DNA of 62,879 bases, filler included, from Octopus bimaculoides (taxonomy: Eukaryota), in NCBI RefSeq assembly GCF_001194135.2. It is 8 parts of 8 records of this genome, joined end to end, with 100 filler letters (N's around TTAATTAATTAA, not from the genome) between each part and the next. Parts side by side here need not be neighbours in the genome. Positions count along the whole stretch, not along the records: positions 1 to 28,601 come from NC_068992.1; 7 more parts are not named here. The stretch is one strand, 5' to 3'. A program made the position numbers and the translations under genes. The notes under the pieces were generated by a model, which saw only the letters and a list, made by a program, of their open reading frames with translations, did not search any database and had not been told where the DNA came from. Below, piece by piece: positions 4,351 through 28,452 of this stretch (the stretch's first letter is position 1; every line of letters starts with the position of its first letter).

Positions 4351-6292
4351 TTCAAATATTCATCGTAATCATCAACATTAAAAATACTGAATATACATGT
4401 AATCCCACACTACAATTGTAAGATGTTTTCACTTTGTATATGTCATATTATTGTCAATAAATTGTTTTATTCATTGTCTTAATTTGCTTAAGAAATCGAA
4501 TAACAGGTTTTTTTTCACGTGTGTAATACAATCATATGTAAATTTTGTACAAGCCATGTCGATTGAAATATTTTCAAAATTTTTTTTGTTTTATTATTTT
4601 GATAAGGTTAGGCAGTTTAGGCCTTATCGTTTAGGCAAATTGAGACATAATACATAATACCGAAATTATGATTTTTTTAAGAGTAATTTTTTTAATTTTT
4701 ATAACTTTCTCATTATTATTATTATTATTATTATAAGACATGGAAGGAAATCAATTTCCCACCATGTGTAATATTTCTTTTAAAAAAGTTTAAGAGAGAG
4801 TACAAAAGGAAATCTTTCCTTTTTCCGGACGTCTATAAATCCTACTTCTATAAATCTGAACGGTGTTGTATGAAATATTAACATCGCCCGAAACGGAATT
4901 GGTTGGCATAGGGACTGTTAACATTTTTTTCGACACGTGTTGCTATCGTTTAATCCCAAGTTTGGAAAGACTTCCTCCCGTCCCCGATAGTTGAGGCAAA
5001 AACCTGCTACAGAGGCATTTTTGTAAACACACTAGAATAATTAAGAAAACGGCACATGTCATTTACAAAACAAAATTAGCAACTGTGAAAAACAAAAATA
5101 ATACTCTAGAGGTATTAAAATTTGACACATGTATCTCTCAGGAGTATGTCTTGTCATAAACTAGCTAGTGGTAAATATATAATTAACTAATTAGTAATGC
5201 CCCGTCTTATTCGTATTTATATAAAATATCAGCTGGGTGGAGAACTCATATAACCAAATACCTTCTTTGAAAGATATGCCCTTGTACAATAAACTACAGC
5301 CTACAACTTGAAACATTCGTTTTTATGTATCAAGATTATGGATGTCGTAAGGATGGTTTGAACACGAAACAACAGATAGCAAACTAAAGAAGAAGAGAGA
5401 AAGAAAAAAAGAAAACGTAAAGCACCAAGATTAGTTATCTCAACTGAGATTATTGTCTTAAAAATAATGATTCAATTTTTTGAGGGGTGAGCGAGGTCGA
5501 TTACATCGACCCCAGTGCTCAAATGCGAAGTCGGCAACGACAGTATTTGATCTCAGAACGTAAAGACCAGGAGGAAATACGGCTAAATATTTTGTGCAGT
5601 ACCTGAAGAAAAATGATTTCTAATTCTGTTGCATGGCTAACAATCTTGAAAGAAGGTGGTTAGTCGAATAAACCGATCCTCACTACTGGACTGATACTTC
5701 ATTCTGTCGATCTTGGAATGAAAGATAAACTTGACCTCAGAGAGATTTGAACTCAGAACTAAAGAGTAGGAATAAACACCGCAAAGTATTTCTTCGGCAT
5801 TTCAACAATTCTGCCAATAATATTGATAATTCATGCTAATCTTGACGAACGGTCGAAATCATTATTGTTGTTTAGCGCGGGGTCAGTCTTAACTGAAAGA
5901 GAACGAATCGTTGGTCAAAAAGTTCGACAAGTCAGTTCGATAAAATAAAGTCTTTAGGAATCGATAAAATAAAGTACCAGTCAAATCAATATAATCGATT
6001 CTGTACTCTACAATCAACATATAAAGTCTTGTATGTGAATTATTATTATTATTGTGTCGAGTAGGTAAATCGTTAGTCATAAAAGTTGTGACCATCCTGT
6101 CTATTACTCAGACACGTTTCCTTAGCCTTAGTAGGGTGTGATATAGCTACTATTTCTAGCAGGTGGAACAATCGCGTATTTGATTTGAAGTTTTGAAGCA
6201 TATTAGTGACATTCTAATTATTCTGAAGACATCATAAACAAGGATACGACTACACTATCATAATGATTTCTTACATTGATAGAATTACAGTA

Positions 6293-6801: not shown

Positions 6802-7746
6802 TCAGTGTTTAAGTGCCAATATACAAGCTATAACATAAAGAAGTCCAAAAATAAAATTCAACCGTGCCACTTTCCGAGGCAATTGTTCCAAGTGACGGTA
6901 ACGAAAATATCTCTCCAATTTAAAGGATTCAAACACGGTTAAGAGAGGTAGAAAATACCATTTGGAATAATGCAGTCCAAAGTAGACAAAGGCAATATAG
7001 GGCAGAAATAAAAGCATCACGAACAATATGTAGGAGCCAGTATGGCCCAGCAGAATGGCTAAGGTAACAATCCCAGCATCTGTATCACTTTCCATATGTC
7101 GAGTGTTATTGCAATGAAGGACTGCTTCAGCACTGATAGCTAAAGGGATGGCATAAAAAATGAGTTCGTTCGATAGTTCGCCGGTTTGTGAAAGAAAGGC
7201 GAACACGACTGTAAGGGGGCCAAAAGTGAGAAAGACTACCACGTCTCCGAGAGCAATGTACTTCAGTCCAAGACCACCAGTGTAAAGGAAACTTCCGGAT
7301 AAACCTCCGAAGTAAATAAGGGCCAAGTGCTCCATGCGGGCAGGAGAAATATAGGTAAGCAACAAAAATCCACAGCATCCCAACACGTAGGACAACCCTC
7401 CCAGCCAAGCAATGTCACCCGGCATCAACACAGAATCGACCAATGTTTTGTGGTTAGCATCTTTCTTTTTCTTAGTGTCGATTCCTCGAACATAATCGAC
7501 GTACGTGTTGACAAGATTTCCAGCAGCATGGACAGAAAGGGCAGTGAGACAGGTGACCAAAGAGATGAGAAGGCTAAATTCGGCATGCTCCATATAGGCA
7601 AGGGCGCTGCCTAAAGCAACTGGGGTAAAAGAAGATGTGAAAGACCATGGTCGAAGTGCTGCTAAGTATTTAGACAATTCCTGTGAAAGAGAAGTTTTCT
7701 TGAGATGACACTTGTTTCCTTCTTTAGCATGGCTATTGTTTTGCAT
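6802..7746 (-). CDS. UBIAD1: UbiA prenyltransferase domain-containing protein 1 (UBIAD1/heix family), single coding exon, 314 aa
   Basis: Uninterrupted ORF from ATG at 7746 to TGA at 6802; the ORF track's start at 7749 is a GTG. Family motifs: LRPWSF, HAAGNLVNTYxDYxxGID, GLSGSFLYTGGLGLKYIALGD, LHCNNTRxMESDxxAGIVTLA, plus multiple hydrophobic TM segments. Confidence 0.96.
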   Translation of the reverse strand: MQNNSHAKEGNKCHLKKTSLSQELSKYLAALRPWSFTSSFTPVALGSALAYMEHAEFSLLISLVTCLTALSVHAAGNLVNTYVDYVRGIDTKKKKDANHKTLVDSVLMPGDIAWLGGLSYVLGCCGFLLLTYISPARMEHLALIYFGGLSGSFLYTGGLGLKYIALGDVVVFLTFGPLTVVFAFLSQTGELSNELIFYAIPLAISAEAVLHCNNTRHMESDTDAGIVTLAILLGHTGSYILFVMLLFLPYIAFVYFGLHYSKWYFLPLLTVFESFKLERYFRYRHLEQLPRKVARLNFIFGLLYVIACILALKH

Positions 7747-7749
7747 CAC

Positions 7750-8297
7750 TTCAGTATAATTTTTCAGTTGGTGTAAGCTTTTTTGACACGGTCTTATTGA
7801 GAGTTACCACAAGCAACAGCGGCCCGCTTTCTAGCGATGATGATCCGCGAGAAACATACTAAATGAGGCGAGGGAGAGAACTACAAGTGGTGTGAATGTA
7901 TAAAAATGTGGAATAAGGAATAAACGAAAGACGAAAACGAAAAAATAAATGTCAATTTAAATAAAATTGATAAATTAATAATTAAACAGATAAAAGATGT
8001 AATATTTATTATTATTAGAGTCAACTATATTTAAAATATATTAATCACGAATTTGAGTAATGTTTAATGGAAGAGTCAACGCAGCGTGTTTATATAATAT
8101 ATATGCATGTATGTGTATGTATATGCGTATCAATGTGTGTTTGTATGTCTGTGAAATGGGTGTGTATGTGAGAAACTCGCCAGATTGCTATGATATATTA
8201 TATAAATATTTATAAGTATTTCTGATAATACGTTGATTTTTTTTGTTTCGTGTGCATGTGCGAATCTGTTCATTTATGTACATGGGCGTACGTGTGC

Positions 8298-8328
<31 letters not shown>

Positions 8329-8600
8329 CGATCCCATTTGCACATGAACAGTTTCTTGCATACAAACACACCCACACATACATACATACACATATACTCA
8401 TTTATTATTTGTTTTATATATATATATACATATATATATATTTATGTAGAAGTGTGTGTTTGTGTACGGGCGCACACATATTTCTTTGAATTATTTAATA
8501 TATATGTGTAGCAATAATCTCGTATAAACGAGAGCTTGAACGAAGGAGTGTATGTATATGTGTGTGACTTCCAGACGAGATCTCCCATTAATCTATGGTG
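7750..8600. promoter_or_regulatory. Candidate shared (bidirectional) promoter region between UBIAD1 and MTOR
   Basis: Divergent gene starts. CpG-rich patch at about 7815-7875 in otherwise CpG-poor DNA, containing CGCGAGA (7846-7852) and ACTACAA (7880-7886). (GT)n(GC)n tract at 8288-8330. TSS positions unknown. Confidence 0.45.
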
Positions 8601-8747
8601 CAGGTAAACAAGGCAGCTGTATGCAATGTGTAACATTCATAGAAGCCTTTTAACACAACCGCCTTCCGATCACAAAGTTTATTTATCATTTCCTGGGGAA
8701 TATTCAACTCAGATATGTTAATTTGGACGACATGGGAGATCTTTAAG
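8560..8747 (+). other. Candidate non-coding 5' UTR exon of MTOR
   Basis: MTOR coding exon 1 has an acceptor upstream of its ATG, so an upstream exon must exist. AAG|GTAAGC at 8747/8748 is a strong donor near the putative promoter. The 5' boundary is a guess. Confidence 0.3.
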
Positions 8748-9580
8748 GTAAGCTTTTGTTTAGTAAATGGTTAATAAATGTTCCATCTCTGCTTGATTTC
8801 AATGTACATTTCACCCTGTTCCCATTTAAAAGAAAGAGATAAGAAGATTATTTAAAATATACTCTTTAATGGCAAATTTTTAATAATTATTTTTACCATT
8901 TAGAAAGACAAGCCTGCATTCATGCCGATGTTCTTTATCCATGCTGCATTAATTATTTTAGATGATGTTTCAAGAAAAGAAAAGCTGAACCATTTATAAG
9001 AGAAAAACAACAAAACCATTTTTATTAATGTTATCATCATCAGCATTATTATTATTATTATTATTATTTCGTGTTTTCGGGGTTCGTGAAATAAGTACCA
9101 GTTGAGAGCACTGGTGTCGATCGCAATCCGTTATCCTCCTCCCACTAAGAATCTTAGGCTTTGTGCCAAAACTAGAATGAATAATAGAGAAACTATTATT
9201 ATTATTAGGAACTGTCGGAAGTCTTTTCCACTGTCTGTCTTTATTGGGTTATAAAAATTTAGGAACCACAAAATAATCGATCTCGTTGCTATTCCCTCGT
9301 CATTTGCATATTCAAGATTCCTCCTTAAATTTTTCGCTGCTTGCTGCGGCTTTCACAGATGACTGACACTATATATCCACACATGCACACACACACACAC
9401 TATTATGCACTCAAAGAAACCTGCTAGAAATAGCAAACGAATTCCCCTTAAATCACACCCTACTGTATTCTTTAAAATAGAGCTATATTAATGTAGTCCT
9501 GGATACGCTCTGACCAGAAAAAAAAAAAGAATGCCTTTCATTATAGGCGTGTTCTATTAGGGTTAATCAGAGAATAAACT

Positions 9581-9645
<65 letters not shown>

Positions 9646-10011
9646 CATACATACAGGAGTTCCTTGATGTGCTGGAAATAGCAGCCAAATTTCCCTCGAA
9701 TTACTAATTAAAAAAAAATATTATATTGGGACATTGTATTTCGGGTAATGCATCTCTGGATACGTTAGTATTAAAGAGAGAGAAAAAGACTAGATTGTTA
9801 CAGCTGAAATGCTTTTAATTGTAGACGTGCCCTATCAATTTCTAACCTGGGGGTTAAACAATACTCACACACATACATGCGTGTGTGTCTATGTTCAGTG
9901 CTTCATTAAACCTGACATTCAAAGCACCATCGGGGTCGGCTTTGCTTTAATATGCAAGTGAACTACAAGCAGTGGACTCCAATAACTTCATCTTTAACAT
10001 AGTGTGTGTAA

Positions 10012-10047
<36 letters not shown>

Positions 10048-10655
10048 CCCCCCTCCCTCCACTTTTAACAGTGGATTTGCTTCAGCTTTCGTGAACAAAA
10101 ACCGTACAAAAATCAAAAACTCAGAATGCGAAAAATAAAAACATGTCGCAAATTAAATAATTATCATTATTTTGTCTATTTTGAAAGTCTTCTTGAATGA
10201 CATAAATATCACTTTTTTTCCTTTCCCTATAAATATGAGACCTTTAACCTACGCAAGAAATGATTTATATAAACACACACATCTCGTACAAGAATTTTCT
10301 GTTTGTGTTTTCGATTTCAAACTTTGAAATTTGAGTTTTATGTTACTTATTATGTCGGGGTTTAATATCATTTCTTTTCACTTGCGTCACTAACGCTAGG
10401 GAGAACGGCGTAAACATCATCAAATATTCGCATCTCTCTCTCCCGTTTCTGAGATATTATGTTCATGTGAGAAATATTCCATTATGTTATGGCTTACAGA
10501 TAGAAGTGGTTGTCTGTGTACGTATCCACATGCAGATACATCATACATTTATATACATACTTGTATACAACATGCGCACATGCGATATATGCACTCCTAC
10601 ATAACACATTCACGCACTAATATAAATTATATATATATATGTGTGTAAATATCGG

Positions 10656-10699
<44 letters not shown>

Positions 10700-12879
10700 T
10701 ATACAATTTAGATGTAAAATAATTTTATTGAATATGTTTTCTCTTGTGGCTTAACTGTCTCCTCTCCTCCTCATTCTGAGCGGAGTGAAAGCTTAAGTCT
10801 ACATTGTAGAGACGAATGGTTCAAGAGAAGAGATTAAGTCATGTACAAAAGATCTGTAAGGTCAGAATTGGCAGTGGATTCGGTATAGGTAGGTATTCAT
10901 CAAGGCTCTTATCTGATTCTGTTGAAGAGCTGCAAGAAAGATTCTACATCTCGTAGAAAGATTTGGAATTGTTTGGTAGGTAATACTGCAAAGTTGAAAA
11001 CTAATTAATAACAGACAACACAAAATGTCAGCGCCATGCAGAAAGTGGTCTTGTTTTGTTAAAAGTGTTGATAGGGATACAGGCACAAGATCAAATTTCC
11101 AGGACCTTTTGGTTCTAAAGTCTTTCTGAATTAGTGAGGGGTGGTCAACTTGATCAACACACCCTAAATTAAATTAAATATTAAATTTATTTGAATAATT
11201 AAATGAAAAACAGGTGTTCGTACATTAGTGTAAATTAGTAAAGATTATAAGAGGTTCCAGACCATCAGTGTCTGGAAGGTTAGTGTTGTACCTGTACTAT
11301 CTACTCAGTACAAGATACAAGTGATCAAGATTTGAGATGACATATTCACAAAGAATCAAAGATTTTAACACCAGTTAACCTATGATCTTAATGGCTAGTT
11401 GACAGTCAATTGTTATATTGGTGATATGCTTAAGTGGTGGAGGTAGAAGCAGTAAGAATCTAATTGCGCTAGAATAAGGTAGAAGTAGGGGTTTATAGAG
11501 CTAGGAAGGGTTGTTTTTTTAGGGGAGGAGGCAATGCCCATGACACTTTTAATGGGTTTGCTTGACTAGTTGGAAGGAGCAAGCTGTTAAAGTAGTGACC
11601 TGGTGCTTGAATGCTTACAAAAAAAATGGATTCAGCTAAGAGCACCCAAGGTGCTAGTTGTTAATGTCAAACTGGGTCACAAATTTGTCCCATCAACCAA
11701 ATTAGTTATGGCAGGATTTGAACTTAAGCTGCAAAAAACTGAAACAAATAGAGTAAAGCATCTTGTCCAACATTCTTACAGTTCTGCAGTTCACTGTCCT
11801 GGATTGATACTTTGTAAGCCATAAAGTTTCTCTTCACAAATGCAAGTTGTATGGTAGTAAGACATGGGATGTGGGGTTTCAGTGTGTAAAGTGTGCATAG
11901 ATTTTAACCTCCAAAAGCCCTAATGGACCCCAGTTGAGAACCATTGACGGAGAGACTCCCTTATTGGTTTGGTTTAAATTTTTTAATTTTATTTGGTATG
12001 CAGTGATGAGGCCAACACTTGAAAGTGAAACATTTTAGGGACAGAGTCTATGTTGATTTAATTCTTAGTTTAATGTGAATTACTGAGAGTAATGAAATAT
12101 TAGGTTTGCTGCTAGCATCCTTCTAGCCTCCCCAACTCCTGTACCACCTTCAAACCTTTTCAATCTTTACAGATATTGCCTTCCTCCTATCTCTTTCCAC
12201 ACATATCCTTGCAAACTCCCATCCACTATTACTTGAGTTGCAACAGTGAATGACAACTACAGCTACAGCTTCTGTGTTATCTGAGGCACTTGCTCTCTCA
12301 GTTATCAAATTTTCAAACTGGACTGCCGTGATTGTCACCAACCATCTGATGTGGTCAACATTCATGAGGGATGTGGTGAACTTGTTGGTCAGTGCCAGCT
12401 CAATCCACAACAGGTGAATGCTCCCACAAGAACAAGTACTTGAGGTGCCACCTGGACACCTCATCATCACTATCACTTTGGAGGTACTACCAATTAACTT
12501 GTTCACTCTCTCCTAAATATGAGTAGCCAGGTAGCTCCTCTACAGCAAGAATCTGCAGTACCAAATTCACTTAAGGCATTGATCAGTTCATGCCTATAGC
12601 AGAAAACACTTGTCCAAGGTGCATGTGGTTGCACAGGGAGCTTATTAACCACACAGCCATTCCTACACCTATGACACACAATGCATGTATAGTTTTGATA
12701 TCATTAGGTGTTCAAATCATACTAAAATCACGCTGTTTTACTATCATGAAATTAGTGTTTTCCTGTTTAAAAAATGTTTCTTATGCTGTTTAATAATTTT
12801 TTTTTTTTCTTACAGATTAAACTGGATTGAAAAAAGAAATTTGGGCGGTGCCTCTGTGTGGAGAGACAATTTTACCAAA

Positions 12880-13102
12880 ATGACATCCAAACATATAACT
12901 CCTTTTATTACTGGCTTACGTAGCCGCAATGACGAAAGTCGACTGGCAACAGCCTACGAACTTTATCGTTATGTTAACACTGATGTTCCTGAGATGCCTT
13001 TAGATGACCAGAATGCATTCATTGATGAGATTAACCACAATGTCTTTGAGATGGTATCCAGTAGCGAAGTGCATGAAAAGAAAGGAGGAATTTTGGCTAT
13101 TG
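12880..13102 (+). CDS. MTOR: mTOR coding exon 1 (MTSKHITPFITGLRSRN...EKKGGILAI)
   Basis: Acceptor tacag ends at 12815, ATG at 12880, donor GTGAG at 13103 (phase 1). Matches the mTOR N-terminus GL.SRN...FE.VSS...E.KGGILAI. Confidence 0.93.
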
Positions 13103-14124
13103 GTGAGCAGAATTGTCTCTTTAGTGTTTTTGTCATTCTTTTTCAAAATATCCATCTTAGATACCCTTCAAAAGAATTTTATATATTTGCATGAATAATT
13201 TTGGCAGTGTTCCAGTATGGTTAGTATTAGAGTAATTCAAACTAATTTCTTTGGCATCCATGTTCTTTACGAGACCATCAGTCTGTGATGTGACAGTGGG
13301 GCATCCACTCCAGGGTGTAGACCCCGGTAAGATTGTTTACAAGTACTTAGGCAGCAGGTTTCCTCTCCTCAACAATGTTAGCTAGGGTATGGGCAAGGGC
13401 TGATGAAGTTTAGCACCAGTTCCATTCTGGCTGGATTTGCCAGAATACAAACCGCAGCACAATCTATGCACCCGTCTCCACATGTGTGCCATTTTTCACG
13501 TGAATCCACCCATCCGTTTGGCTGTGAACCTCAAGACAAGAAAGAATACAATGGTCGCCCATGTCCAATTTATATTATAGATATATAATCATCTTCATCA
13601 TGATCCTTTAACACCCATTTTCCCTGCTGGCATGGGTTGCATGGGTTGACAGCAGCTGGCCAGTGGAGGAGCTGTCTAGACTCCCATTGTTCATTGTACC
13701 ATGGTTTCTACAGCTGGATGCTCTTCTTAACACCAACCACTTTACAAAGTGTGCTTGGTTTCTTTATGTGCCACTGGCATAGGTGCATCTACATAACACT
13801 GGCACAAGTGCATTTTATGTGGCACCGGCACTTCTGAAGGACAAGCCTATATGTATGAAAGACAATGATTTAACTTAGCTTGGTGTGTCTTCTCAAGTAC
13901 AGCAAATCACCACAACTCTCGGTCCCTTGTCATTTCCTCAGTGGGGTCCAGTTTCTAAATATCCACACATGCACACGTACGCACGTAGCCTAGTGGTTAT
14001 GGTGTTCCATTCATGATCACGAAACCTGTTTTCAATTCCCAAACTGGCAACCTTATTCGAAAGCGTCAACATTGCAAGGAAGTGCATTGTTACCAACGGT
14101 ATATAGTATCTCATCTGGTTCATA

Positions 14125-18331: not shown

Positions 18332-18567
18332 CCACCCTAGTTGGTGTTGATATTGGAAATGCAGCTACAAAAATTAGCCGTTTCGCTAATTACTTGAGAA
18401 ACCTTGTTCCATCCAGTGATGTTGGCTTGATGGAAATGACAGCTAAAGGGATGGGCATATTAGCTCTGTCTGCTGGTAACCACGCTGCTGAGTATGTGGA
18501 CTTTGAGACCAAGAGATCTCTGGAACTTTTAGCTGGTGAAAGACATGAAGGCCAACGTTATTCAGCA
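18332..18567 (+). CDS. MTOR: mTOR coding exon 2 (ATLVGVDIGNAATKISRFANYLRNL...EGQRYSA)
   Basis: ttttacag acceptor and GTAAGT donor; phase matches the previous exon; RFANYLRNL motif. Confidence 0.96.
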
Positions 18568-19382
18568 GTAAGTAAACACACATACAATGGCATATACCCT
18601 TGATAATAAATTAGCCTAAATGGTGTCTGCCTGCATGAAGAATGGTGTGTATTTGCAACTGAAGAGCGGCATTATTGATTCCAGGTTTTTGTTTGCAACA
18701 GTTATAAACTTGGTACAAAACATGTAACTGTTTTGAAACTGGAACGATGTACTACAAAATTGAACCACTATGACAAGATTCATCTTAGTAACATTTGTTT
18801 TTATATTAAGATTTATATCTTATCTTTGTACAAAGAATTACTATTAATTTTAATGTAATTTTGTTTAAAATTGTTTGACATTTTTTTTTATCATGTTGGC
18901 CAGAGAAGCACTTCAAAAAAAAAAGAAAGACAATGTTCTTCCTATTTCTCTCCACATAACTGCAAGTATTACAGGCTATTGTCAGCCAAGCTGTTTGATG
19001 CATATCATTATAGAGCTTGCTGACTGGTTGTTGTCAAGGCCTGAACTCATGGCCTGTGGTCAAAATAATTGAACGTGTTGTTTATTGTGAGAAAATATAT
19101 AATTTTATCACCAATATGGGTTAGATCCTATCTTTTCAAGGAAAATGGATTAAACATAGAAGAACTGGGCAATTTATGGGTTATTGTTTTTTGATTTTTT
19201 AACATAAGTAACCCACAAACACTGTTAATGTCACTTAAGCATTTATTATTTGGTGCAATGGAATTATGTCAGTGACCAGGTTGCTGTTGATATGATACAA
19301 AACTTTTTTTTATATCTTTTGTTTCTCTCTTGAAATTGTTGTAAATTAAGGAATCCTTCATTTGTTTCTTTCCTTCCCAAAG

Positions 19383-19484
19383 GTCCTTATTCTGAAGGAG
19401 TTGGCTACTTTTACCCCAACATTCTTTTTTCAACAAGTTCCACAGTTTTTTGAAAATATCTTCAATGCTGTTAGAGATCCCAAG
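19383..19484 (+). CDS. MTOR: mTOR coding exon 3 (VLILKELATFTPTFFFQQV...RDPK)
   Basis: AG acceptor and GTAAGT donor; 102 nt; PTFFFQQV motif. Not in the ORF track; read manually. Confidence 0.95.
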
Positions 19485-20583
19485 GTAAGTTGTTGTTAAG
19501 TCTAATTGTCTACTGTTACTTTTTTTACAGTTTTCCTTCATTGAACCCTTGTCCCTGCTGGAGCATTGCTTTCACCACTCCAACCAATTATTTCAATCTC
19601 AGTACATAAAGGTACTTCTTTTATTGAATGGATTTTAGAACAACCACAAAGCTGATTTTGGTAGGATTTGAAGTCAGAATGTAAAGAGAATTAACCAAAT
19701 CCCAGAATATCATGACTCATTCTCTACCAAACCTTCATATTTCTTTCTTTTTATTGTTTCTTTTTTTAATTCTAGAAATTACCTGTTTATACATAACACT
19801 TTAAGTAAAAGCAAAGTAAATATCTTTAATTTCAACCCTTTTGTTACTGTATTTCTAACCAAAATACACCTTGTGTTTCTCAATAAAATTCTAAAATAAT
19901 CTTGAATTTTGATTGGTTTCAAAGCAGAAGTGTTTTTTATTGTGATTTTTGGAACACGCTTTAACAAAAGGTTCTCAACCAAATGTGTTTAATAATTTTT
20001 GTCTCATTTAATGTGTAATGTAGCTGTTGGTGTGGCTGTGTGGTAAGAAGTTTGCTTCCCAACCACATGGTTTCAGGTTCAAGCCTACTGCATGGCACAT
20101 TGAGCAAGTGTCTTCTACTATAGCCCCTGGCTAACCAAAACTTGGGAATGGATTTGACAGCACGCTCTGTAAAGTGGTTGGTATTAAGAAAGGCATCCAG
20201 TCATAGAAACCATGCCAAAATACACAGAAGAGCTTGGTGTAGTCCTCTGGCTAAGTAGCTCCTGTCAAACTGTTCAACCCATGCCAGCATGGAAAGCAAA
20301 CATTAATAATGATGATGATGACAACGATATATATACTTATATGTAAGTGTGTATTTGTGTCCCTTATCTTGACACTGTGGTGAGAGTTGGAAATGATTGC
20401 TACTGTCATACAAGTAGTGTTGCTCATTTCCAATACATTTTGGAGTTGGCTTTTGAGGGTTGGCAACAGGAAGTGCATCCAGTTAGAGAAAATTTGCCTC
20501 AGTAAACTCCATCTGACTTATGCAAGCATGGATTGTTAATTTATTATAATTTATCCTAATAAATCTCTCTTGTGCTGTTCCAG

Positions 20584-20682
20584 CCTGCTGTCAGAGAAGC
20601 TGCCGTAGCTGCATTACGGGCAACACTTGCTGTTACATCACAACGAGAGACGAAAAGAGATCACAGTGAAGACTGGTACAAA
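20584..20682 (+). CDS. MTOR: mTOR coding exon 4 (PAVREAAVAALRA...DWYK)
   Basis: ttccag acceptor and GTCAGT donor; 99 nt. Confidence 0.93.
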
Positions 20683-21169
20683 GTCAGTAAACCTTTTCTT
20701 TCCTCCTTTTTCTCCTTTAATTCTTTCTTCCTTTCTTCCTTTCCTGTTTTCTTCAATGCTTTTATTCATGTAATTCCCTTTTGTTCCTTTCTTTACCTTT
20801 TGTTAACTTTTCTAAGTTTCTCTCAATTTGTTCTTCTATTTCCCAAGCTCATGTTTAGATGTTTATTAGAGCATTTTTTGTTTTATGGTCTTGTATCTCT
20901 TCATTTAACCTGCTTCTGGTGGGGTCTACTCTGATTCAGAGTAGTAACACCTCTCCAATAGGCCTACATTGTATATTAGTTCAATAACTAATATTTTCAT
21001 TATTAAGCTACTGTTTAGACTGTAACTTAGATTATGTTGGAAGGTCTTGATTTGGGAAAGTTTAAAATGCAAGGTACTATCAGGTAGGTTCTTATAGAAA
21101 AGGTTTTAATTTGTTTATTGCAGAAATTGTTGTGAACTGATTTTAGTTTATTTTATTAATATTTGTTAG

Positions 21170-21304
21170 ACTTGTCTAGAAGAAGCCTTGAGGCCATACA
21201 GTGATGCTCTTGCTAAAGAAAAACGTCTCAACAAGGATGATTGGCTGCATGGATCTTTACTGATAATCAATGAACTTCTACGATGCAGTAACATGGAAGG
21301 AGAG
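21170..21304 (+). CDS. MTOR: mTOR coding exon 5 (TCLEEA...LHGSLLIINELLRCSNMEGE)
   Basis: ttgttag acceptor and GTGGGT donor; 135 nt; HG.LLI.NEL motif. Confidence 0.94.
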
Positions 21305-21324
21305 GTGGGTTCCCCCCTTCTTTT

Positions 21325-21361
<37 letters not shown>

Positions 21362-21495
21362 AGTGTTAGTATGTTTTCTCTGCTAGAACAAAATAGCTGG
21401 CAAAAATCAGTAAAGCATGGAACTAAATGTGGTATTTAGTAACATCCTTTCACATATTAACATTCTGAGTTGTAATCCCACCAAGGTCCAAAATA

Positions 21496-21858
21496 ATACA
21501 CCATTCCGAGCGTGGCCGTTAACCGTTACCAACGTCGCCTCCCTGGCACGTGAAAAGACATTCGAGCGAGATCCTTGCCAGTGCCGATGGGCTGGCTCCT
21601 GTGCAAGTGGCACGTAAAACACACCATTTCGAGCGTGGCTGTCGCCAGTTCCGCCTGACTGGCCCTCATGCCGGTGGCACGTAAAACGCCCACTACACTC
21701 TCAGAGTGGTTGGCGTTAGGAAGGGCATCCAGCTGTAGAAACTCTGCCAAATCAGATTGGAGCCTAGTGTAGCCATCTGGTTCACCAGTCCTCAGTCAAA
21801 GCGTCCAACCCATGCTAGCATAGAAAGCGGACGTTAAACGACGATGATGATGATGATG
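21496..21858 (+). mobile_element. Repeat family B: RTE-tail-like SINE or LINE 3' end terminating in (GAT)n
   Basis: GTTAGGAAGGGCATCCAGCTGTAGAAACTCTGCC ... GGACGTTAAACGACGATGATGAT. Older copies near 13590-13830, 20165-20315, 26690-26820, 27650-27810, 29080-29240, 31790-31990, 34824-34920 and 61075-61260. Confidence 0.8.
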
Positions 21859-22508
21859 TTTAATGTTCAATGAAACATGCTGGGGGAGTCAATATGATAA
21901 ATTGTTTCATAGAAGGCAATGCTCCAGCATGGCAACAGTTCAATATCTGAAAACAGTAACAGAATAAAAAGCATGTTATGCATCCATAACGAAGGACCAA
22001 GATACCTGATGCTTTGAAGACCCATCCTCCTCCGCAGCAGAAGTGTTAAGGCCGCATCCCCTGGTGATGAGGATTGGCCTGCAAGAACCCTGTGCTGGTG
22101 CCTCATAAAAAAGTACTCCTGGCACGTAAAGACGCTTGTGCTGGGGCCATGTTAAAAGTACCCAACACACTGTAAAGTGGTTGGCATTAGGAAAGGCTCA
22201 ATCTGGCCAGTTTGAATATAAAACTGAATGTTAGTGCCAGTTTAAATGGCATAGGGTTAATGAACTGAAATAGCTCAGCTGTGAGTCTACAATGATTGAA
22301 ATAGTGGTAGTTGAACTCAGCTGTGAACCATCTAATTATAAGGAATTGAAAAGAGTTACAGCAGGGATTGTCCCATAAACCTTCTATTCTTTACTTCTAA
22401 CCTATTATTGATTAGTTTAATTAAATTTAAGAGTTGAAAATACTGAATAATACTTTTTTTTTTTTTTGTTGATTTGTTTTATATTATTTTGTTTTTCAAT
22501 TTCTTCAG

Positions 22509-22571
22509 CGCCTTCGTGTTGAAATGGAGGACTTGGCCATTCAGCAAAACACGTTTGAGAAAGCAGTGAAG
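22509..22571 (+). CDS. MTOR: mTOR coding exon 6 (RLRVEMEDLAIQQNTFEKAVK)
   Basis: ttcttcag acceptor and GTGAGT donor; 63 nt; RLR.EME motif. Confidence 0.9.
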
Positions 22572-23375
22572 GTGAGTAGGCTTTATACTCATTATGATTA
22601 TCCATTTTCTTCACCTTTCTCTACTCCTTTTTATTTAGTTTTTTTTTCCTTTATTTCCTTCTCAATATTAAAAGATATGAAAAGTAAGAAAAAGGGGTTT
22701 CAAAAATGTAAATCTTATATTTTCCAATAATTACATTTTGTATTAATGTTTGTGAGCCTATAGCAAGACATCCATACTCCAACACAAAGGGAGTCTAAAT
22801 TGGACAACATGTTTTATAGGTTATTATATAATAATAGTAATAATAATAATTATTATAATACTATTATTAAAAGAGTTGTTTCCTCTGTGTACAGCAAGAT
22901 TTGCGTATTTATTCATATGTTCCAGCAGATTTGAATGCAGATATGCTAGTCACTGTTGTGTATGTCACAGCAGCACAACTTCATTTTACAATGGCAATGT
23001 GCTCATAACACACTCCACTCATTGGTGCAAGGATTCTTCAACACCAGTCAGAAGCATCCTTGGTCCTTTCAAGCCAATGGCTTTGTTTATGATTTCAGTG
23101 AACAAGCTGGTTGCTGCTCAGTGCTGATACCTGCCAACTGATAAACAAGCGTTCTTTGTATATTTATTCTTAATATATTATTCTACTTGTAGCAGAGTAC
23201 AAAATATGCACATTTTCTCTTCCTCACCCTTTCCTCTTCAAATAGCTTTCCACAACCTATTGAGGGAGATTGTTTCTATGTTTGTTTCCAATTCAATTTA
23301 AAAATAAAGTTTGTTTGTTTTTTTTTTTTTTTTTTTTTACCTTATTTGAAATGTCTTTAAAAATTTTCTTTTCAG

Positions 23376-23543
23376 GAATTCTCTCCACGCCGCAGATCCC
23401 CTGCCAACACCAGTGGCTTCCAACAACTACATCAAAAGTCTCCTTTAATAGTCTTCGATGCATCACATGCATCAGCACCTCAGAAAAGAGGTCTCTTTGA
23501 AAGTAGAGTTTGCAAAGAGCTAATGACCAAAAACTATGACAAG
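23376..23543 (+). CDS. MTOR: mTOR coding exon 7 (EFSPRRRSP...FESRVCKELMTKNYDK)
   Basis: ttttcag acceptor and GTTTCT donor; 168 nt, open in phase 0; ESR.C..LM....D motif at the 3' end. Confidence 0.88.
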
Positions 23544-23950
23544 GTTTCTACAATCTTTTTTACAATTCTATTCATTCCTTTTTTAATAATTTTATTTTCT
23601 TCTATGTAATGGAGTATTGTTTATAATTCAGTAAAGTCTCTATCCATCAAATCCACTCACAAGGCTCTAGTCAGCCCCAGGCTTGAAGAAGACACTCAGT
23701 GTTATTCAGTAGGATTGAACCCCAAGTCTTGTGACTAGCAATCAAACTTCTTAACCACTCATCCATTTCTCTGCCAGTCTGTGGTTGATAATGTGCTAAG
23801 ATACTGGAGTAGGTTATAGGATATGGGCAGTCAGTTAAATTATTTATACATCCTGCCTAAAACAATAAAGACAAAAACACATCTTGTATTAAAATTGACC
23901 TTGTCAATGAAAATAGTTGTTGAAGAGAGCACATATGATCTTTATTACAG

Positions 23951-24066
23951 GTAGCTAACTTGGTTCATCAACTTTACCAAGGAAATCGTAGCAGCTATGT
24001 ACAACAAGTCATGCTGAAAGCCATTCCTAGGTTGGCAGCTTTTGATCCAGAGTTGTTTTCCAGAAC
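23951..24066 (+). CDS. MTOR: mTOR coding exon 8 (VANLVHQ...IPRLAAFDPELFSR)
   Basis: ttacag acceptor and GTAAGT donor; PRLAAF motif; ends in phase 2. Confidence 0.94.
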
Positions 24067-24729
24067 GTAAGTGCACCTTAACACTGTGTGTGTGTATACT
24101 CTTAATCCAAAATTTCATCGATTTGTAATGAAATCAAAATCTTAACTACATTCATGGTTTTTTTTTCTTTATTATTATTATTAAAACAAAATTTTAAAAG
24201 AATGGGCTTAACCCTTTAACACTTAAACTGGTCGTATTTGGCTAACATTTTCTACTTGTTTCATGTTAAAACTGGCCAGATCCAACTTCTTGCACGTACC
24301 CTGCAATGTCATTCTAAAAACAGTCGCATCATTGAAATTTCAAAGCTATGAGATGATGCATGATTAATTCTAAACAATGTGAATAAATAAATAAGCATTA
24401 CATTTAACAGAATAATCTGGATACTGAAAGTTTAAATTTATATTCTTTTAATTTTAAAATAAATTTACAGTTGATGTTGTGCAACACCTGTGACTTTATT
24501 CAACTCTGGAGACTTCAGTTTTTAAGGGAACATTCCATTGAGCTGTTCAATGGTGACATTTTAGCATAATTAAAATATTCATTATGGTCATAAAAGTGGT
24601 GGTGGCAGCACTGGTTGTTTTTGTTAGAGTTCTGAGTTTTGTTTTTCCATCAATAAGATGGAATGTTAAATGATGATAATGGTTAAAAATATTTAGAAAC
24701 TGTGAGGTTTTTCTGTTTTTTTTCTCCAG

Positions 24730-24909
24730 GTACCTTCGAGACACCATCGTATACTTGCTTAATGCTTTGCGGCGTGATAAAGAAAGGGCTGCAGCATTCC
24801 AAGCAGTGGGTCTCCTGGCAGTTGCTGTGAAGGATAACATCTTCAGCTTTTGCAATCGGATCATGGAGTTTGTGAGAAGTGCTCTACCACCCAAGGATTT
24901 ACCACAAAA
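24730..24909 (+). CDS. MTOR: mTOR coding exon 9 (YLRDTI...KERAAAFQAVGLLAVAV...ALPPKDLPQ)
   Basis: ctccag acceptor and GTAAAT donor; 180 nt; AAFQA.GLL and ALPPKD motifs. Confidence 0.95.
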
Positions 24910-24954
24910 GTAAATAAAAACCACTTTTCATTTTAAGTCTCTTTTTGTTTTGGA

Positions 24955-25548
24955 ATGTTTCTCTCCCTGGCATGTGATGGAATCTGTTTTCTGAGCATCT
25001 TTGGTGTTTATTGCCCCTGTGCATCTGCTGCACACAAAAACTATCATCCCAGTTAACCTTCCTTTGGTGTTGCTGCACCTCTTATGTGTCCATAGCTTAC
25101 ACTGGGGACATCTCATGGAGTTTCTACCCACACTTTTTCTGCAGATCGAGCAGGACCATCTACCTGAAGGTGTTTGTGATTTGTTCACCTTCCTACTTAC
25201 TAGGACTTTGGTTTTTGTAACTTTGACTCTAAAGCCCTTTGATTCTAGACCTTGCTTCCACACCTGAAATTTCTTCTCTAGTTCTGGTAATGATTCAACT
25301 ATGAGAGCAAGGTCATCAGCATAGAGGAGCTCCCAGGGACAGCCTGTCTTGAATTCCTCTCTTATTGCCTGGAGGACTGATGAATAAGAGGGGGCTGAGG
25401 TCTGATCCTTGTGAACCCCTATTTCTACCTGGAATTCTTCACTATACTCGTTGCTGACCCAAACCTTACTGACAGCATCCCTGTACAGCCCTTTTTAACC
25501 ACTCACTCGTCTATCCCTAGTTTCTGCATTGCCCACCAGATAAGGATG
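24955..25548 (-). mobile_element. Second copy of the same RTE-clade LINE fragment, in the MTOR intron after coding exon 9
   Basis: Aligns by eye to about 3735-4325 of the first copy (LLYADDL, WKQGLESKG, Cys/His segment). Confidence 0.92.
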
Positions 25549-26104
25549 AAAGCCAGTTTCATCTCTTGTACAATATTTACATCAGATTATGTTAACGAAT
25601 ATAAAAATTTTAATGAGACAGTAATGATTTCCCAGAAAATAAGAAAAATAAATTTGAAGGAACAAAAATCTAAATGAAGAGATGCAAACAGAAATAAAAT
25701 ACATTTTTCCAGATTTTTCTAATGTTGACTTTAGGAAGAGCATCCAGCTTTTGGCATTGTGACCCAGTGCCAAAGGAGACACTGGATCACAATGCAGTCC
25801 TTGAACCCATCAGATCCTGTTATACTGTCCAATCCATGCCAGCATGGAATGTGGATGCTTAAATGATAATAATCCAAAACTCAGTTGACCACCATTAAAC
25901 TGTAACAAAATAGCTTTATTTCTGCAGTGAATTTTATTTTTTTCATCTCGCATTCTATTTTTAATAAAATATCAAGTTTCCCATTTTATTTTATTCTGAT
26001 GTACTTATAAAAATTAGGAAGAAAACTGGAAGATTATCTGGTTTGTTTCATTGCTTGTAGTTGTCATTAGATAAATCTAATTAAAAAAGTATTTTGTCTT
26101 TCAG

Positions 26105-26233
26105 GAAACAGAAAGCTATCTCTGTGGAACCTTCCGTTTTTACCTGTATCAGCATGTTGGGGAGAGCTTTGGAGACTTCAATTGCTCGTGACATGAAGGA
26201 CATCTTGGACTCCATGCTGTTCACAGGTTTAAG
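26105..26233 (+). CDS. MTOR: mTOR coding exon 10 (KQKAISVEPSVFTCISMLGRA...MLFTGL)
   Basis: tttcag acceptor and GTAAAT donor; 129 nt; VFTCISML motif. Confidence 0.95.
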
Positions 26234-27112
26234 GTAAATGCTTAAATAATTTAATGATAGTTCTAACCTACTGAAATGTTGGTTGTTCTTGCTTTGGACC
26301 AGTCATTCTGGGACTCTGCATATTCTCTTATTTATGGTCATCTTAGAATGTTATGGTTTCTTATTTTTCATTATTGTTGTTGTTGTTGTTGTTTGAGTAG
26401 TGGGATGAATGGTAAGTATGGTGCCAGTATGCTTGTGTGATGTGGTCAAGATTCTTGTTTCTCAACCATGTGGTCTCAAGTTCAGTTGCATTATGCAGCA
26501 CCTTGGGTAAGTGTCTTCTACTACATAGCCTCAGGCCAACCAAAGCCTTGTTAGTAGATTTGGTTGATGGAAACTGAAAGAAGCTTATCATTTATGTGCG
26601 TGGGTGTGCACCCATGTTTTGACATCACATGGTAGTTGTAAACAAGTGTCCATATCATACATGTAATGTTTCTTTCCAATCTGTCATGGGAAATATTACC
26701 ATGTTTGGAAACGGGTAAGTGCTAATAACAAGAAAAGCATCCAGCTGTATAAAATCTGCCTCAACAAATTCCATCTGACCCATGTGAGCATGGAAAAGTG
26801 AATATTAAATGATGATGATCATCGTGATGCTAGAATAGATCTGCAAGACTTGAGATCTTGTGGGAGTTTTTTTTTTCTTTTTAGTTTGGTGCTTTAGGGT
26901 TCTGACATGACCACGGGTGGTATGTATTTTGCCCTCCCTTCTGTAGTGTGTGTGGGGGTTCACTAAAAAAAATACCATAAATCAAATTATTCTTTTTGTT
27001 TCTTGTTTTAATATCAACCTTGTACTTGGTCAAAGTGATATTTCCTTTGTTGTTTTTTGTTAATCATTTTCATCTTATTTTGTTAATTCAATTTTTTTCC
27101 TTTCTCCATCAG

Positions 27113-27270
27113 TCCTGCATTGACAGCCGCACTGCGGGATCTGGCTACCTATATCCCCCAGATGAAGAAAGATATCCAAGATGGGTTACTTAGGATGTTG
27201 TCCTTGATTCTGATTGGTCGACCACTTCAGCATCCTGGTGCTCCCAAGAATTTACCCATTGGGTCGTCTG
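27113..27270 (+). CDS. MTOR: mTOR coding exon 11 (SPALTAAL...KKDIQDGLLRMLSL...HPGAPK)
   Basis: ccatcag acceptor and GTAAGC donor; KKDIQDGLL motif. Confidence 0.95.
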
Positions 27271-27899
27271 GTAAGCAAACCCCGATTTTTATAATCCATG
27301 TTCTCATTAAAACTATCTCTTATTTCAGAGCTGCAGCCCCTTTCCTCTACCCATGTTCTCCTCTCAGTGTTTCCCTTCTTCCCTTCACATTCTCAAAATC
27401 TTACTTTTGCACTCACCTTATCCAGTCCTTTGTACTACTTATATACACACCTTCCTGTAACTTGGAGTATTCCCTGACACATCTTCCCTATCTTCTCTTT
27501 CTCTCTCTGGTAGCCATGTGTCTCCTATACAGCAAAACACCTGTTTCTGTCCCTCGGTCATACTTTAACCTCTCATCACCTGGTACTCCCTCAGTACTAC
27601 TTTCCCTTCATTTGTGGGGGTCTTGTCTTGCAAGTTACTTGGTGACCTTGTTGGCGCCATGTAGAAAGCAACCAGTCCATTCTGTAAAGTGGTTGGCTTT
27701 AGGAAAGGCATCCAGTAATAGAAACCATGCCAGAACAGACATTTGGAAACTGGTGCATCTTTCTGGCTTGTCAAACTGCCCAATTCGTGCCAGCATGGAA
27801 AATGGACATTAAAAAGGGGGGGGGGAACTAATGTTATCTGTGTGTGTGAGAGAGAGATGCGTTATTGTTTACTGATTGTGTATTTATTTCCTTTTGCAG

Positions 27900-27971
27900 C
27901 TGGTAGTGATTCTCAAGATGACACTAGTATTACATTGGCACTCTCAACTCTGGGCAGTTTTGATTTTGAAG
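27900..27971 (+). CDS. MTOR: mTOR coding exon 12 (GSDSQDDTSITLALSTLGSFDFE), last exon detectable
   Basis: ttttgcag acceptor and GTAAAC donor; SITLAL.TLGSF.FEG motif. Confidence 0.93.
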
Positions 27972-28452
27972 GTAAACCAAATTCATTTCTTTTGTTCAAG
28001 GCAATAACTGAAAACATTTTTGTTTTTTAAATGTTGTAGTGTTATTTAAGAGTTACAACTGTTGTATAAAAATTAACAGGTTTATTTGATCAGAGCTAAT
28101 AGCTATCTTTAATTTGAAGACAAAGAGTAATGTTCCCTCCAAAATGAGAATATAGGCACAAAGACGTATGTTGTTTATCCTATATGTAAAGGAAATTAAA
28201 CATTTTTGGCACCAACTCACCTGAATCTGTCCTTGGTTCAATGATACAAACTCCATGTCTTAAAATCATCTTAATTAAAACCTACCATCAAAATTTCATA
28301 TAAATTTATATTCAAAACACCAGCTTAATAATGAAAAAGTTATTTTACTGAATTCATTATTATTTTCAAAATTATTTGAGCCAAAGGTATTTCAACAGAG
28401 ATGTAGCAAAAGGGTAAATGTAATATCAGTACATTAAAAATAATTTATATGC

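What the first reader, a model, noticed from the sequence alone, without database searches (positions are those of the whole stretch)
6802..13102. MTOR and UBIAD1 are head-to-head, as in human
Seen: UBIAD1 (minus) and MTOR (plus) diverge with ATGs about 5.1 kb apart on a gap-free contig. Knowledge: human MTOR and UBIAD1 are adjacent and divergently transcribed on 1p36, and coleoid cephalopod genomes are extensively rearranged. Inference: an ancient bilaterian microsyntenic pair kept by a shared promoter, linking growth signalling with vitamin K2/sterol regulation.
Basis: partly seen in the sequence, partly recalled or inferred. Interest (0 to 1): 0.75.

Follow-up and report, generated by a model that had tools for sequence, protein, structure and literature searches.

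The report
Ancient head-to-head MTOR–UBIAD1 gene pair
In this octopus sequence the growth-control gene MTOR and the vitamin-K2/CoQ enzyme gene UBIAD1 sit back to back, as they do in a scallop, a brachiopod, a worm and humans; it is a real, old but ordinary case of conserved gene neighbours, with no evidence yet that the two genes work together.

Summary
The piece is Octopus bimaculoides chromosome CM046612.1. UBIAD1 is one uninterrupted reading frame (6802-7746, minus strand). MTOR runs the other way, with its ATG at 12880. The ATGs are 5134 bp apart and the piece has no N.

The pair is inherited, not convergent. The same head-to-head arrangement, with no gene between, occurs in O. vulgaris, Argonauta, the scallop Pecten, the brachiopod Lingula and the annelid Capitella. 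In human a published SNP table places the two genes about 10.6 kb apart. MTOR was not found within 10 kb of UBIAD1 in a limpet, a chiton, a nemertean, the annelid Owenia, a spider and a sole.

An intronless UBIAD1 coding sequence is the protostome norm, so this is not a young retrocopy.

The 5.1 kb figure overstates the gap. MTOR very probably has a non-coding first exon at about 8504-8747, only about 760 bp from the UBIAD1 ATG. The stretch between them is the one CpG-undepleted island in the piece.

Closely apposed or shared promoters are therefore plausible but unproven. A functional link between growth signalling and vitamin K2/sterol control has no support here. The pair fits the known class of conserved ancestral microsyntenic pairs. 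Interest is low to moderate.

The parts
6802..7746 (-). UBIAD1 coding sequence, a single exon of 314 codons plus stop. The ATG is at 7746-7744 and the stop at 6804-6802.
   Evidence: ORF; Pfam UbiA E=1e-29; 98% identical to O. vulgaris UBIAD1, 55-66% to other invertebrate UBIAD1 and 52% to human; exact match to a gene called in GCA_001194135.2.
7096..7098 (-). His217 codon, at the place of the first Asp of the second Asp-rich motif (NNTRHMESD; human D236).
   Evidence: His is found only in the four cephalopod-like hits P0001-P0004. Most of the other top-120 hits where the motif was found have Asp; two have Asn.
7747..8503 (.). Divergent promoter interval between the UBIAD1 ATG and the inferred start of MTOR exon 1. 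It is AT-rich, holds (GT)n/(CG)n microsatellites and is CpG-undepleted.
   Evidence: CpG observed/expected is 1.53 here. The 850-bp windows starting at 7651-7951 are the highest of 556 windows in the piece (median 0.30, 95th percentile 1.02). The same peak lies next to UBIAD1 in Argonauta and O. vulgaris. There is no splice acceptor directly upstream of the UBIAD1 ATG (read).
8504..8747 (+). Inferred non-coding exon 1 of MTOR (5' UTR); the donor GT is at 8748-8749. The 5' limit is approximate.
   Evidence: This is the only non-repetitive intergenic block conserved between Octopus and Argonauta (8549-8754, 73%). Conservation stops right after AAG|GTAAGCT in all four octopods. The 5' end of the O. 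vulgaris MTOR gene model (L001 9159) maps to about window 8504.
8731..8745 (+). Four-codon upstream ORF (ATG GGA GAT CTT TAA) at the 3' end of MTOR exon 1.
   Evidence: The ATG and the in-frame TAA are kept in O. bimaculoides, O. vulgaris, O. sinensis and Argonauta (alignment A2).
8748..12815 (+). MTOR intron 1 (in the 5' UTR). It holds microsatellites and a strongly CpG-depleted block at 11000-12815.
   Evidence: Donor and acceptor read. CpG observed/expected is 0.09 for 11000-12815. No Rfam family reaches its gathering score, there is no tRNA and no Pfam domain. In O. vulgaris and O. sinensis this intron is longer, and the first coding exon lies outside the 10-kb flank.
12816..13102 (+). MTOR exon 2, the first coding exon. 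The ATG is at 12880 and the donor is G|GTGAGC after 13102.
   Evidence: A polypyrimidine tract and CAG lie at 12800-12815. tblastn to the human mTOR N-terminus gives E=9e-17. It is 81% identical to Argonauta over 12796-13123. An acceptor at the same place occurs upstream of the ATG in Argonauta, with similar ones in Pecten and Capitella.
18332..27973 (+). Further MTOR coding exons (HEAT-repeat N-terminus): 18332-18567, 19383-19484, 20584-20682, 21170-21304, 22509-22571, ~23484-23543, 23951-24066, 24730-24909, 26105-26233, 27113-27270, 27900-27973+. The gene runs off the piece.
   Evidence: Collinear tblastn matches to human mTOR residues 91-596. Splice junctions were chosen by frame and consensus. 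The exon near 23484 and any exon between 22571 and 23475 are uncertain.

Best explanation
This is the orthologous MTOR-UBIAD1 locus of Octopus bimaculoides. The two unrelated genes have been immediate, divergently transcribed neighbours since at least the protostome-deuterostome ancestor, and the arrangement has been lost repeatedly in individual lineages.

In octopods the real gap is much shorter than the 5.1 kb between the ATGs. MTOR starts with a non-coding exon about 0.76 kb from the UBIAD1 ATG, and UBIAD1 has no upstream intron. Both transcription starts therefore fall within one CpG-undepleted interval of about 0.8 kb.

The most likely reason the pair survives is structural. The promoters of two broadly needed genes are packed so tightly, or are shared, that a rearrangement breakpoint between them would damage at least one of them.

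Shown: gene identities, orientation, distances, conservation across four phylum-level lineages, and the intronless state as the protostome norm.

Inferred: the position of MTOR exon 1, the closeness of the two starts, and selection against breakpoints.
For: The same head-to-head pair, with no gene between, occurs in:
- O. vulgaris, where the MTOR model's 5' end lies 842 bp from the UBIAD1 ATG
- Argonauta hians, 6.0 kb between ATGs
- Pecten maximus, 3.1 kb
- Lingula anatina, 0.84 kb
- Capitella teleta, 3.7 kb

tblastn confirms the MTOR first exons in Argonauta, Pecten and Lingula. In human the gap is about 10.6 kb (PMC5302868).

MTOR exon 1 rests on three observations. It is the only non-repetitive conserved intergenic block between Octopus and Argonauta. 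That block ends exactly at a consensus donor. It also matches the 5' end of the O. vulgaris gene model. A splice acceptor lies 64 nt upstream of the ATG in octopus, with similar ones in Argonauta, Pecten and Capitella.

The CpG observed/expected maximum of the whole piece lies at 7750-8600, and the same peak occurs in Argonauta and O. vulgaris.

The class is known. Of the 595 conserved ancestral microsyntenic pairs described, 54.8% are 5'-5' in human, and these have shorter intergenic distances than controls (PMC3514665).
Against: No transcription start site was measured for either gene in any octopod. The 5' limit of exon 1 rests on another species' gene model.

The UBIAD1 5' flank (7747-8500) shows no detectable conservation between Octopus and Argonauta. 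Comparison between Octopus species is too shallow to reveal constraint.

In human the two genes are about 10.6 kb apart, above the 1-kb criterion for a bidirectional promoter.

MTOR was not within 10 kb of UBIAD1 in Patella, Liolophura, Lineus, Owenia, Parasteatoda and Solea. Any constraint is therefore dispensable.

Non-vertebrate deuterostomes and non-bilaterians could not be examined.
Confidence: 0.7

Rival explanations
1. Neutral leftover. The adjacency is ancestral but under no selection; it simply has not yet been hit by a breakpoint in these lineages, because the target is short.
For: The pair was not found within 10 kb in 6 of the 12 non-octopod or vertebrate lineages sampled or cited. 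Intergenic length varies from 0.84 to more than 10 kb. There is no conserved promoter sequence between Octopus and Argonauta outside MTOR exon 1.
Against: Survival in four phylum-level lineages over more than 500 My, always with the same orientation and no intervening gene, is what the randomisations of PMC3514665 essentially never produce by chance. Octopods kept it despite the coleoid genome reorganisation (PMC9023564).
Confidence: 0.2
2. One reading: the pair is kept because the two genes must be co-regulated from one promoter. This would couple TOR growth signalling to vitamin K2/CoQ10 synthesis and sterol (HMG-CoA reductase) control.
For: The orientation is divergent and the starts are probably less than 1 kb apart in octopods and Lingula. 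Conserved 5'-5' pairs as a class show raised co-expression (PMC3514665; PMC9023564).
Against: No expression data were available here. No paper in the library links UBIAD1 with a bidirectional promoter or with synteny to MTOR. In human the two genes start about 10.6 kb apart. The link is dispensable in many lineages.
Confidence: 0.12
3. Long-range regulatory block. Enhancers of one gene lie within or beyond the other, so that the neighbour is a bystander and the two cannot be separated.
For: This is the second known cause of conserved microsynteny (PMC3514665). A human intronic MTOR SNP is reported in chromatin contact with UBIAD1 among five genes (PMC13400861).
Against: Such blocks typically involve developmental regulators, not housekeeping genes. 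No conserved non-coding element was found in UBIAD1's flanks or in MTOR intron 1 between Octopus and Argonauta, apart from exon 1.
Confidence: 0.06
4. The adjacency arose independently (by convergence) in vertebrates and in lophotrochozoans.
For: It was not found in the spider, chiton, limpet, nemertean, Owenia or sole. No non-vertebrate deuterostome or cnidarian could be checked.
Against: The two genes are unrelated, so tandem duplication cannot recreate the pair. The orientation is identical in every case. Chance linkage in four lineages has a false-discovery rate below 0.0002.
Confidence: 0.03
5. The octopus UBIAD1 is a young intronless retrocopy that happened to land next to MTOR.
For: The coding sequence has no intron, whereas the Solea and Owenia gene ranges are too long to be intronless.
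Against: The coding sequence is also intronless in Argonauta, Pecten, Patella, Lingula, Lineus, Capitella, Liolophura and Parasteatoda. The gene sits at the orthologous position next to MTOR in three phyla. There is no poly(A) tract after the stop codon. It is the closest octopus relative of other UBIAD1 (median 57% identity), whereas the neighbouring paralogue is at 37-43%.
Confidence: 0.01

Closest known systems
Human MTOR-UBIAD1 locus at 1p36.22
   Same: The same two orthologous genes are immediate neighbours and are divergently transcribed. MTOR has a non-coding first exon with the ATG in exon 2 (own knowledge for human; inferred here for octopus).
   Different: In human the two genes start about 10.6 kb apart (PMC5302868), against about 0.76-0.84 kb inferred in octopods and 0.84 kb between ATGs in Lingula. 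The human UBIAD1 coding sequence has an intron and the octopus one has none. Octopods also carry a second, divergent UbiA paralogue tail to tail with UBIAD1.
Conserved ancestral microsyntenic pairs (CAMPs), 5'-5' co-regulated class (Irimia et al. 2012, PMC3514665)
   Same: The genes are unrelated, adjacent in at least 4 major metazoan lineages, head to head with the orientation kept, and separated by a short intergenic distance.
   Different: Whether this pair is among the 595 listed CAMPs could not be checked, because the supplement is not held. Co-expression, which defines the co-regulated subclass, is untested.
HSPD1-HSPE1 bidirectional promoter pair
   Same: A divergent pair of broadly expressed genes, conserved from human to invertebrates (PMC3514665).
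   Different: HSPD1 and HSPE1 are functional partners with a demonstrated shared promoter of less than 1 kb and strong co-expression. MTOR and UBIAD1 have no known shared function and no promoter has been demonstrated.

Membership tests
[quoted passage not shown] | UbiA prenyltransferase domain spanning the protein | tested here: met
   Pfam PF01040, E=1e-29, residues 42-279.
[quoted passage not shown] | Closest relatives are animal UBIAD1, and it is the best octopus match to them | tested here: met
   52% identical to human and 55-66% to invertebrate UBIAD1. The neighbouring paralogue is only 37-43% identical.
[quoted passage not shown] | First Asp-rich motif (N-x3-D-x5-D, human N102...D112) | tested here: met
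   NLVNTYVDYVRGID is present.
[quoted passage not shown] | Second Asp-rich motif D-x3-D (human D236...D240) | tested here: not met
   The octopus protein has H-M-E-S-D; the first Asp is His217. The same holds in P0001-P0004. This does not affect orthology but leaves the catalytic activity open.
MTOR | N-terminal HEAT region collinear with mTOR | tested here: met
   12 exons align in order with human residues 25-596.
MTOR | FAT, FRB, PI3/PI4-kinase and FATC domains | tested here: met
   These lie outside the window. The 2497-aa gene model that begins at this ATG in the same assembly carries all of them.
Conserved ancestral microsyntenic pair (Irimia et al. 2012) | Non-paralogous genes | tested here: met
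   A UbiA membrane prenyltransferase and a PIKK kinase share no domain.
Conserved ancestral microsyntenic pair (Irimia et al. 2012) | [quoted passage not shown] | tested here: met
   Zero intervening genes in Mollusca (octopods, Pecten), Brachiopoda (Lingula), Annelida (Capitella) and Vertebrata (human).
Bidirectional promoter pair (divergent, starts less than 1 kb apart) | Divergent orientation | tested here: met
Bidirectional promoter pair (divergent, starts less than 1 kb apart) | Transcription start sites less than 1 kb apart | tested here: inconclusive
   Inferred at about 760 bp or less, from the conserved exon-1 block, the O. vulgaris gene model and the CpG island. No start-site data exist. 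The feature is not met in human (about 10.6 kb).
Bidirectional promoter pair (divergent, starts less than 1 kb apart) | Correlated expression or promoter activity in both directions | not testable with these tools
   No expression or reporter data were accessible.
Processed retrocopy | Intronless copy with a poly(A) remnant at a non-orthologous site, and an intron-bearing parent gene elsewhere | tested here: not met
   It is intronless, but at the orthologous site, and the same is true across protostomes. There is no poly(A) tract after the stop codon.

The most novel reading that the evidence does not exclude
MTOR and UBIAD1 have been transcribed from one shared bidirectional promoter since the bilaterian ancestor. 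Under this reading, TOR growth control and prenylquinone/sterol homeostasis are transcriptionally coupled, and the coupling was relaxed only secondarily, for example by the 10-kb spacing in mammals and by loss in several lineages.

A side possibility concerns coleoid cephalopods. The MTOR-linked UBIAD1 has lost a catalytic Asp (His217), while a linked paralogue that keeps the Asp may have taken over the enzymatic role. The conserved copy might then be retained for a non-catalytic or altered function.
Probability: 0.12. Interest if true: 0.55.

Novelty: new member of a known kind. Interest (0 to 1): 0.25.

Why it matters
The finding adds one well-documented example to the several hundred gene pairs that have stayed neighbours since early animal evolution. 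It also shows that ATG-to-ATG distance can badly misjudge how close two promoters are: 5.1 kb here against about 0.8 kb.

If the two genes proved to be co-regulated, that would suggest an unexplored transcriptional link between TOR signalling and UBIAD1's roles in vitamin K2/CoQ10 synthesis and cholesterol control.

As it stands it is a solid but unsurprising comparative-genomics observation. It could serve as an anchor for orthology and synteny work in cephalopods.

Tried and rejected
- **Octopus MTOR transcripts.** I searched the protein database with the spliced MTOR N-terminus, hoping for transcript contigs that carry the 5' UTR. It gave 19 hits, none named as octopus and none more than 69% identical, so exon 1 had to be inferred from conservation and a sister species' gene model.
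- **Footprinting within Octopus.** Comparing the intergenic region among Octopus species gave 87% mean identity with no contrast between promoter and intron, which is uninformative.
- **Hidden genes or RNAs between the two genes.** Rfam gave only sub-threshold miRNA-like hits on TG/TA microsatellites, taken as chance. There is no tRNA and no Pfam domain in four intergenic ORFs.
- **Reaching amphioxus or cnidarians.** A profile search of eight UBIAD1 sequences returned protostomes and vertebrates only. The last context look-up, on the sole Solea, found MMP23-like and MIB2-like neighbours instead of MTOR.
- **Published lists.** The supplement of Irimia et al. 2012 is not held. The held parts of the supplement of Schmidbaur et al. 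2022 list a different UbiA-family block and not this pair; those blocks need at least 3 genes.
- **Full-text searches.** Searches for UBIAD1 with microsynteny, synteny, head-to-head, FRAP1 or bidirectional promoter found no description of the conserved pair.
- **Naming P0003 and P0004.** Cluster look-up to name the taxa of the squid-like UBIAD1 hits returned no names.
- **A blastn mix-up, corrected.** An early blastn table pooled three loci held in one file. It was redone locus by locus.

Full report
**Source and observation.** The piece is Octopus bimaculoides. The 314-aa UBIAD1 protein encoded at 6802-7746 (minus strand) is an exact match to a gene called on chromosome CM046612.1 of assembly GCA_001194135.2, and 17.7 kb of the fetched locus is 100% identical to the window. 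The ORF carries a UbiA prenyltransferase domain (E=1e-29). It is 98% identical to O. vulgaris UBIAD1, 89% to Argonauta, 55-66% to other invertebrate UBIAD1 and 52% to human.

On the plus strand, 12 exons from 12880 to about 27973 align in order with residues 25-596 of human mTOR. My remembered UBIAD1 sequence was checked against database mammals and known residue numbers. The assembly's gene model starting at this ATG is 2497 aa and has mTOR_dom, FAT, FRB, PI3_PI4_kinase and FATC.

**Anatomy between the genes.** The MTOR ATG exon is preceded by a polypyrimidine tract and CAG at 12800-12815. It is therefore an internal exon, with 64 nt of 5' UTR.

Against Argonauta hians, non-coding DNA is essentially saturated. 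The only non-repetitive intergenic block that still aligns is 8549-8754, at 73% identity. In a four-octopod alignment this conservation ends immediately after AAG|GTAAGCT, a consensus splice donor, at 8747/8748.

The O. vulgaris MTOR gene model (2552 aa) has its 5' end at L001 position 9159. That is 842 bp from the UBIAD1 ATG and maps to about window 8504. I therefore infer a non-coding MTOR exon 1 at about 8504-8747 and a 4.1-kb 5'-UTR intron.

In O. vulgaris and O. sinensis this intron is longer, and the first coding exon falls outside the 10-kb flank. Acceptor-like sites lie 50-65 nt upstream of the MTOR ATG in Argonauta, Pecten and Capitella as well. ATG-to-ATG distance is thus a poor proxy for promoter distance.

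UBIAD1 has no acceptor-like site directly upstream of its ATG, so its start should lie within 7747-8503.

That interval has a CpG observed/expected ratio of 1.5. It is the maximum of all 850-bp windows in the 28.6-kb piece (median 0.30, 95th percentile 1.02). The same peak sits next to UBIAD1 in Argonauta and O. vulgaris. The distal part of intron 1 (11000-12815) is extremely CpG-depleted, at 0.09.

Nothing else is recognisable between the genes. Rfam gives only sub-threshold hits on microsatellites, there is no tRNA, and four intergenic ORFs have no Pfam domain.

**Is the pair ancient?** I looked up the genomic context of UBIAD1 orthologues with 10-kb flanks. MTOR lies head to head with UBIAD1, with no gene between, in:
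- O. vulgaris
- Argonauta hians, 6.0 kb between ATGs
- the scallop Pecten maximus, 3.1 kb
- the brachiopod Lingula anatina, 0.84 kb on one scaffold; the MTOR model is truncated on a second
- the annelid Capitella teleta, 3.7 kb

tblastn confirms the MTOR first exons in Argonauta, Pecten and Lingula.

For human, a published SNP table places the MTOR promoter SNP rs2295080 10,651 bp upstream of UBIAD1, and a "5' near gene" SNP 6,491 bp upstream (PMC5302868). That means a head-to-head arrangement about 10.6 kb apart, which agrees with my own knowledge of 1p36.22.

MTOR is not within 10 kb of UBIAD1 in:
- the limpet Patella
- the chiton Liolophura
- the nemertean Lineus
- the annelid Owenia
- the spider Parasteatoda
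- the sole Solea

tblastn also found no MTOR exon in the Patella, Lineus and Owenia flanks.

Four phylum-level lineages with identical orientation meet the criterion of Irimia et al. 2012 for a conserved ancestral microsyntenic pair. [quoted passage not shown] Common descent from at least the protostome-deuterostome ancestor is the only reasonable reading. Repeated loss shows that the linkage is dispensable. Amphioxus, echinoderms and cnidarians could not be reached with the available look-ups.

**Retrocopy test.** The UBIAD1 coding sequence is a single exon in Argonauta, Pecten, Patella, Lingula, Lineus, Capitella, Liolophura and Parasteatoda, because the gene range equals the coding length. 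Only the Owenia and Solea gene ranges are too long to be intronless. The octopus gene sits at the orthologous site, has no poly(A) remnant after its stop and is the closest octopus relative of other UBIAD1. It is not a young retrocopy.

**Mechanism.** The best-supported account is that the two promoters are closely apposed or shared. The starts are 0.8 kb apart or less in octopods, and the ATGs are 0.84 kb apart in Lingula. A breakpoint between them would then damage at least one broadly required gene.

This matches the known 5'-5' class of conserved pairs, which make up 54.8% of human CAMPs and have short intergenic regions.

It remains an inference. No start site or expression data were available. 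The UBIAD1 5' flank is not conserved between Octopus and Argonauta. The comparison among Octopus species is too shallow to help. The human genes start about 10.6 kb apart.

A specific functional coupling of growth signalling with vitamin K2/sterol control has no support. No paper in the searched library connects the two genes in this way.

Retention in an octopus is not remarkable in itself. Euprymna keeps 275 ancient microsyntenic blocks, against 216 in a scallop (PMC9023564).

**Novelty and score.** I found no explicit description of this conserved pair. The kind is well known, however, and the pair may already sit in an unheld supplementary list. I class it as a new member of a known kind and score its interest at 0.25.

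**Side observations.** The most notable is that all four cephalopod-type UBIAD1 sequences (P0001-P0004) replace the first Asp of the second Asp-rich motif with His. This residue is human D236, a Schnyder corneal dystrophy site. A divergent 293-aa UbiA paralogue lies tail to tail downstream of UBIAD1 in O. bimaculoides and Argonauta, just outside the window, and it keeps that Asp.

Noticed in passing
window 7096-7098 (-), His217 of UBIAD1: The first Asp of the second Asp-rich motif (human D236, a Schnyder corneal dystrophy residue) is His in Octopus, Argonauta and two unnamed hits at 75-78% identity, presumably squid or cuttlefish (NNTRH[ML]ESD). Most of the other top-120 hits where the motif was found have Asp; two have Asn. 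It may alter Mg2+/diphosphate binding.
   Followed up: partly
L004 19437-20318 (-), about 1.7-2.6 kb beyond the window's left end; Argonauta L003 14628-15509 (-): A second, intronless UbiA-family gene (293 aa, Pfam UbiA 1e-27) lies tail to tail downstream of UBIAD1 in both O. bimaculoides and Argonauta. It is 37% identical to UBIAD1, 69% identical between the two species, and keeps the Asp that UBIAD1 lost. It is an octopod-wide or older fast-evolving paralogue. A chiton has an independent tandem duplicate.
   Followed up: partly
window 8731-8745 (+): A four-codon upstream ORF (ATG...TAA) at the end of the inferred MTOR 5'-UTR exon is kept in all four octopods, although the codons differ.
   Followed up: no
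window 11000-12815: The distal 1.8 kb of MTOR intron 1 has 6 CpG where 65 are expected (observed/expected 0.09), next to the CpG-rich promoter interval. This suggests heavy germline methylation. It has no Pfam or Rfam match, and no extra copies appeared in the fetched loci.
   Followed up: partly
window 3234-4421 (+) and 24928-25549 (-): Two inverted copies of a retroelement-like fragment, one downstream of UBIAD1 and one in an MTOR intron. Each has an ORF with a PHD/C1-like zinc finger. Further copies occur in the O. vulgaris locus.
   Followed up: no
window 2212-2594, 15595-15737, 16122-16450, 18035-18271: A short interspersed repeat, present several times in the window and at about six sites in the 44-kb O. 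vulgaris locus at 66-81% identity.
   Followed up: no
L001/L002 positions 1-4700 (O. vulgaris, O. sinensis): Homology to the window stops at window 12562, and the first MTOR coding exon is not within the 10-kb flank. Intron 1 therefore carries a large lineage-specific insertion in these species. The O. vulgaris UBIAD1 gene model also spans 24 kb for a 314-aa product.
   Followed up: no
L009 15134-20987 (-) (Lineus longissimus): In the nemertean, the gene downstream of UBIAD1 is a 1392-aa Patched/sterol-sensing-domain protein. From memory, human UBIAD1's other neighbour is DISP3/PTCHD2, also a Patched-family sterol-sensing protein. This is possibly a second old linkage.
   Followed up: no
L014 (Solea senegalensis): In this teleost UBIAD1 is flanked by an MMP23-like gene and a MIB2-like gene rather than MTOR. 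From memory, the human counterparts of both lie elsewhere on 1p36. The pair is therefore broken, or more than 10 kb apart, within vertebrates too.
   Followed up: no
window 8275-8460, 9585-9675, 10631-10701: (GT)n, (TA)n and (CG)n microsatellites in the intergenic region and intron give sub-threshold matches to several miRNA families (27-43 bits against gathering scores of 75-100). These are taken as compositional artefacts.
   Followed up: yes
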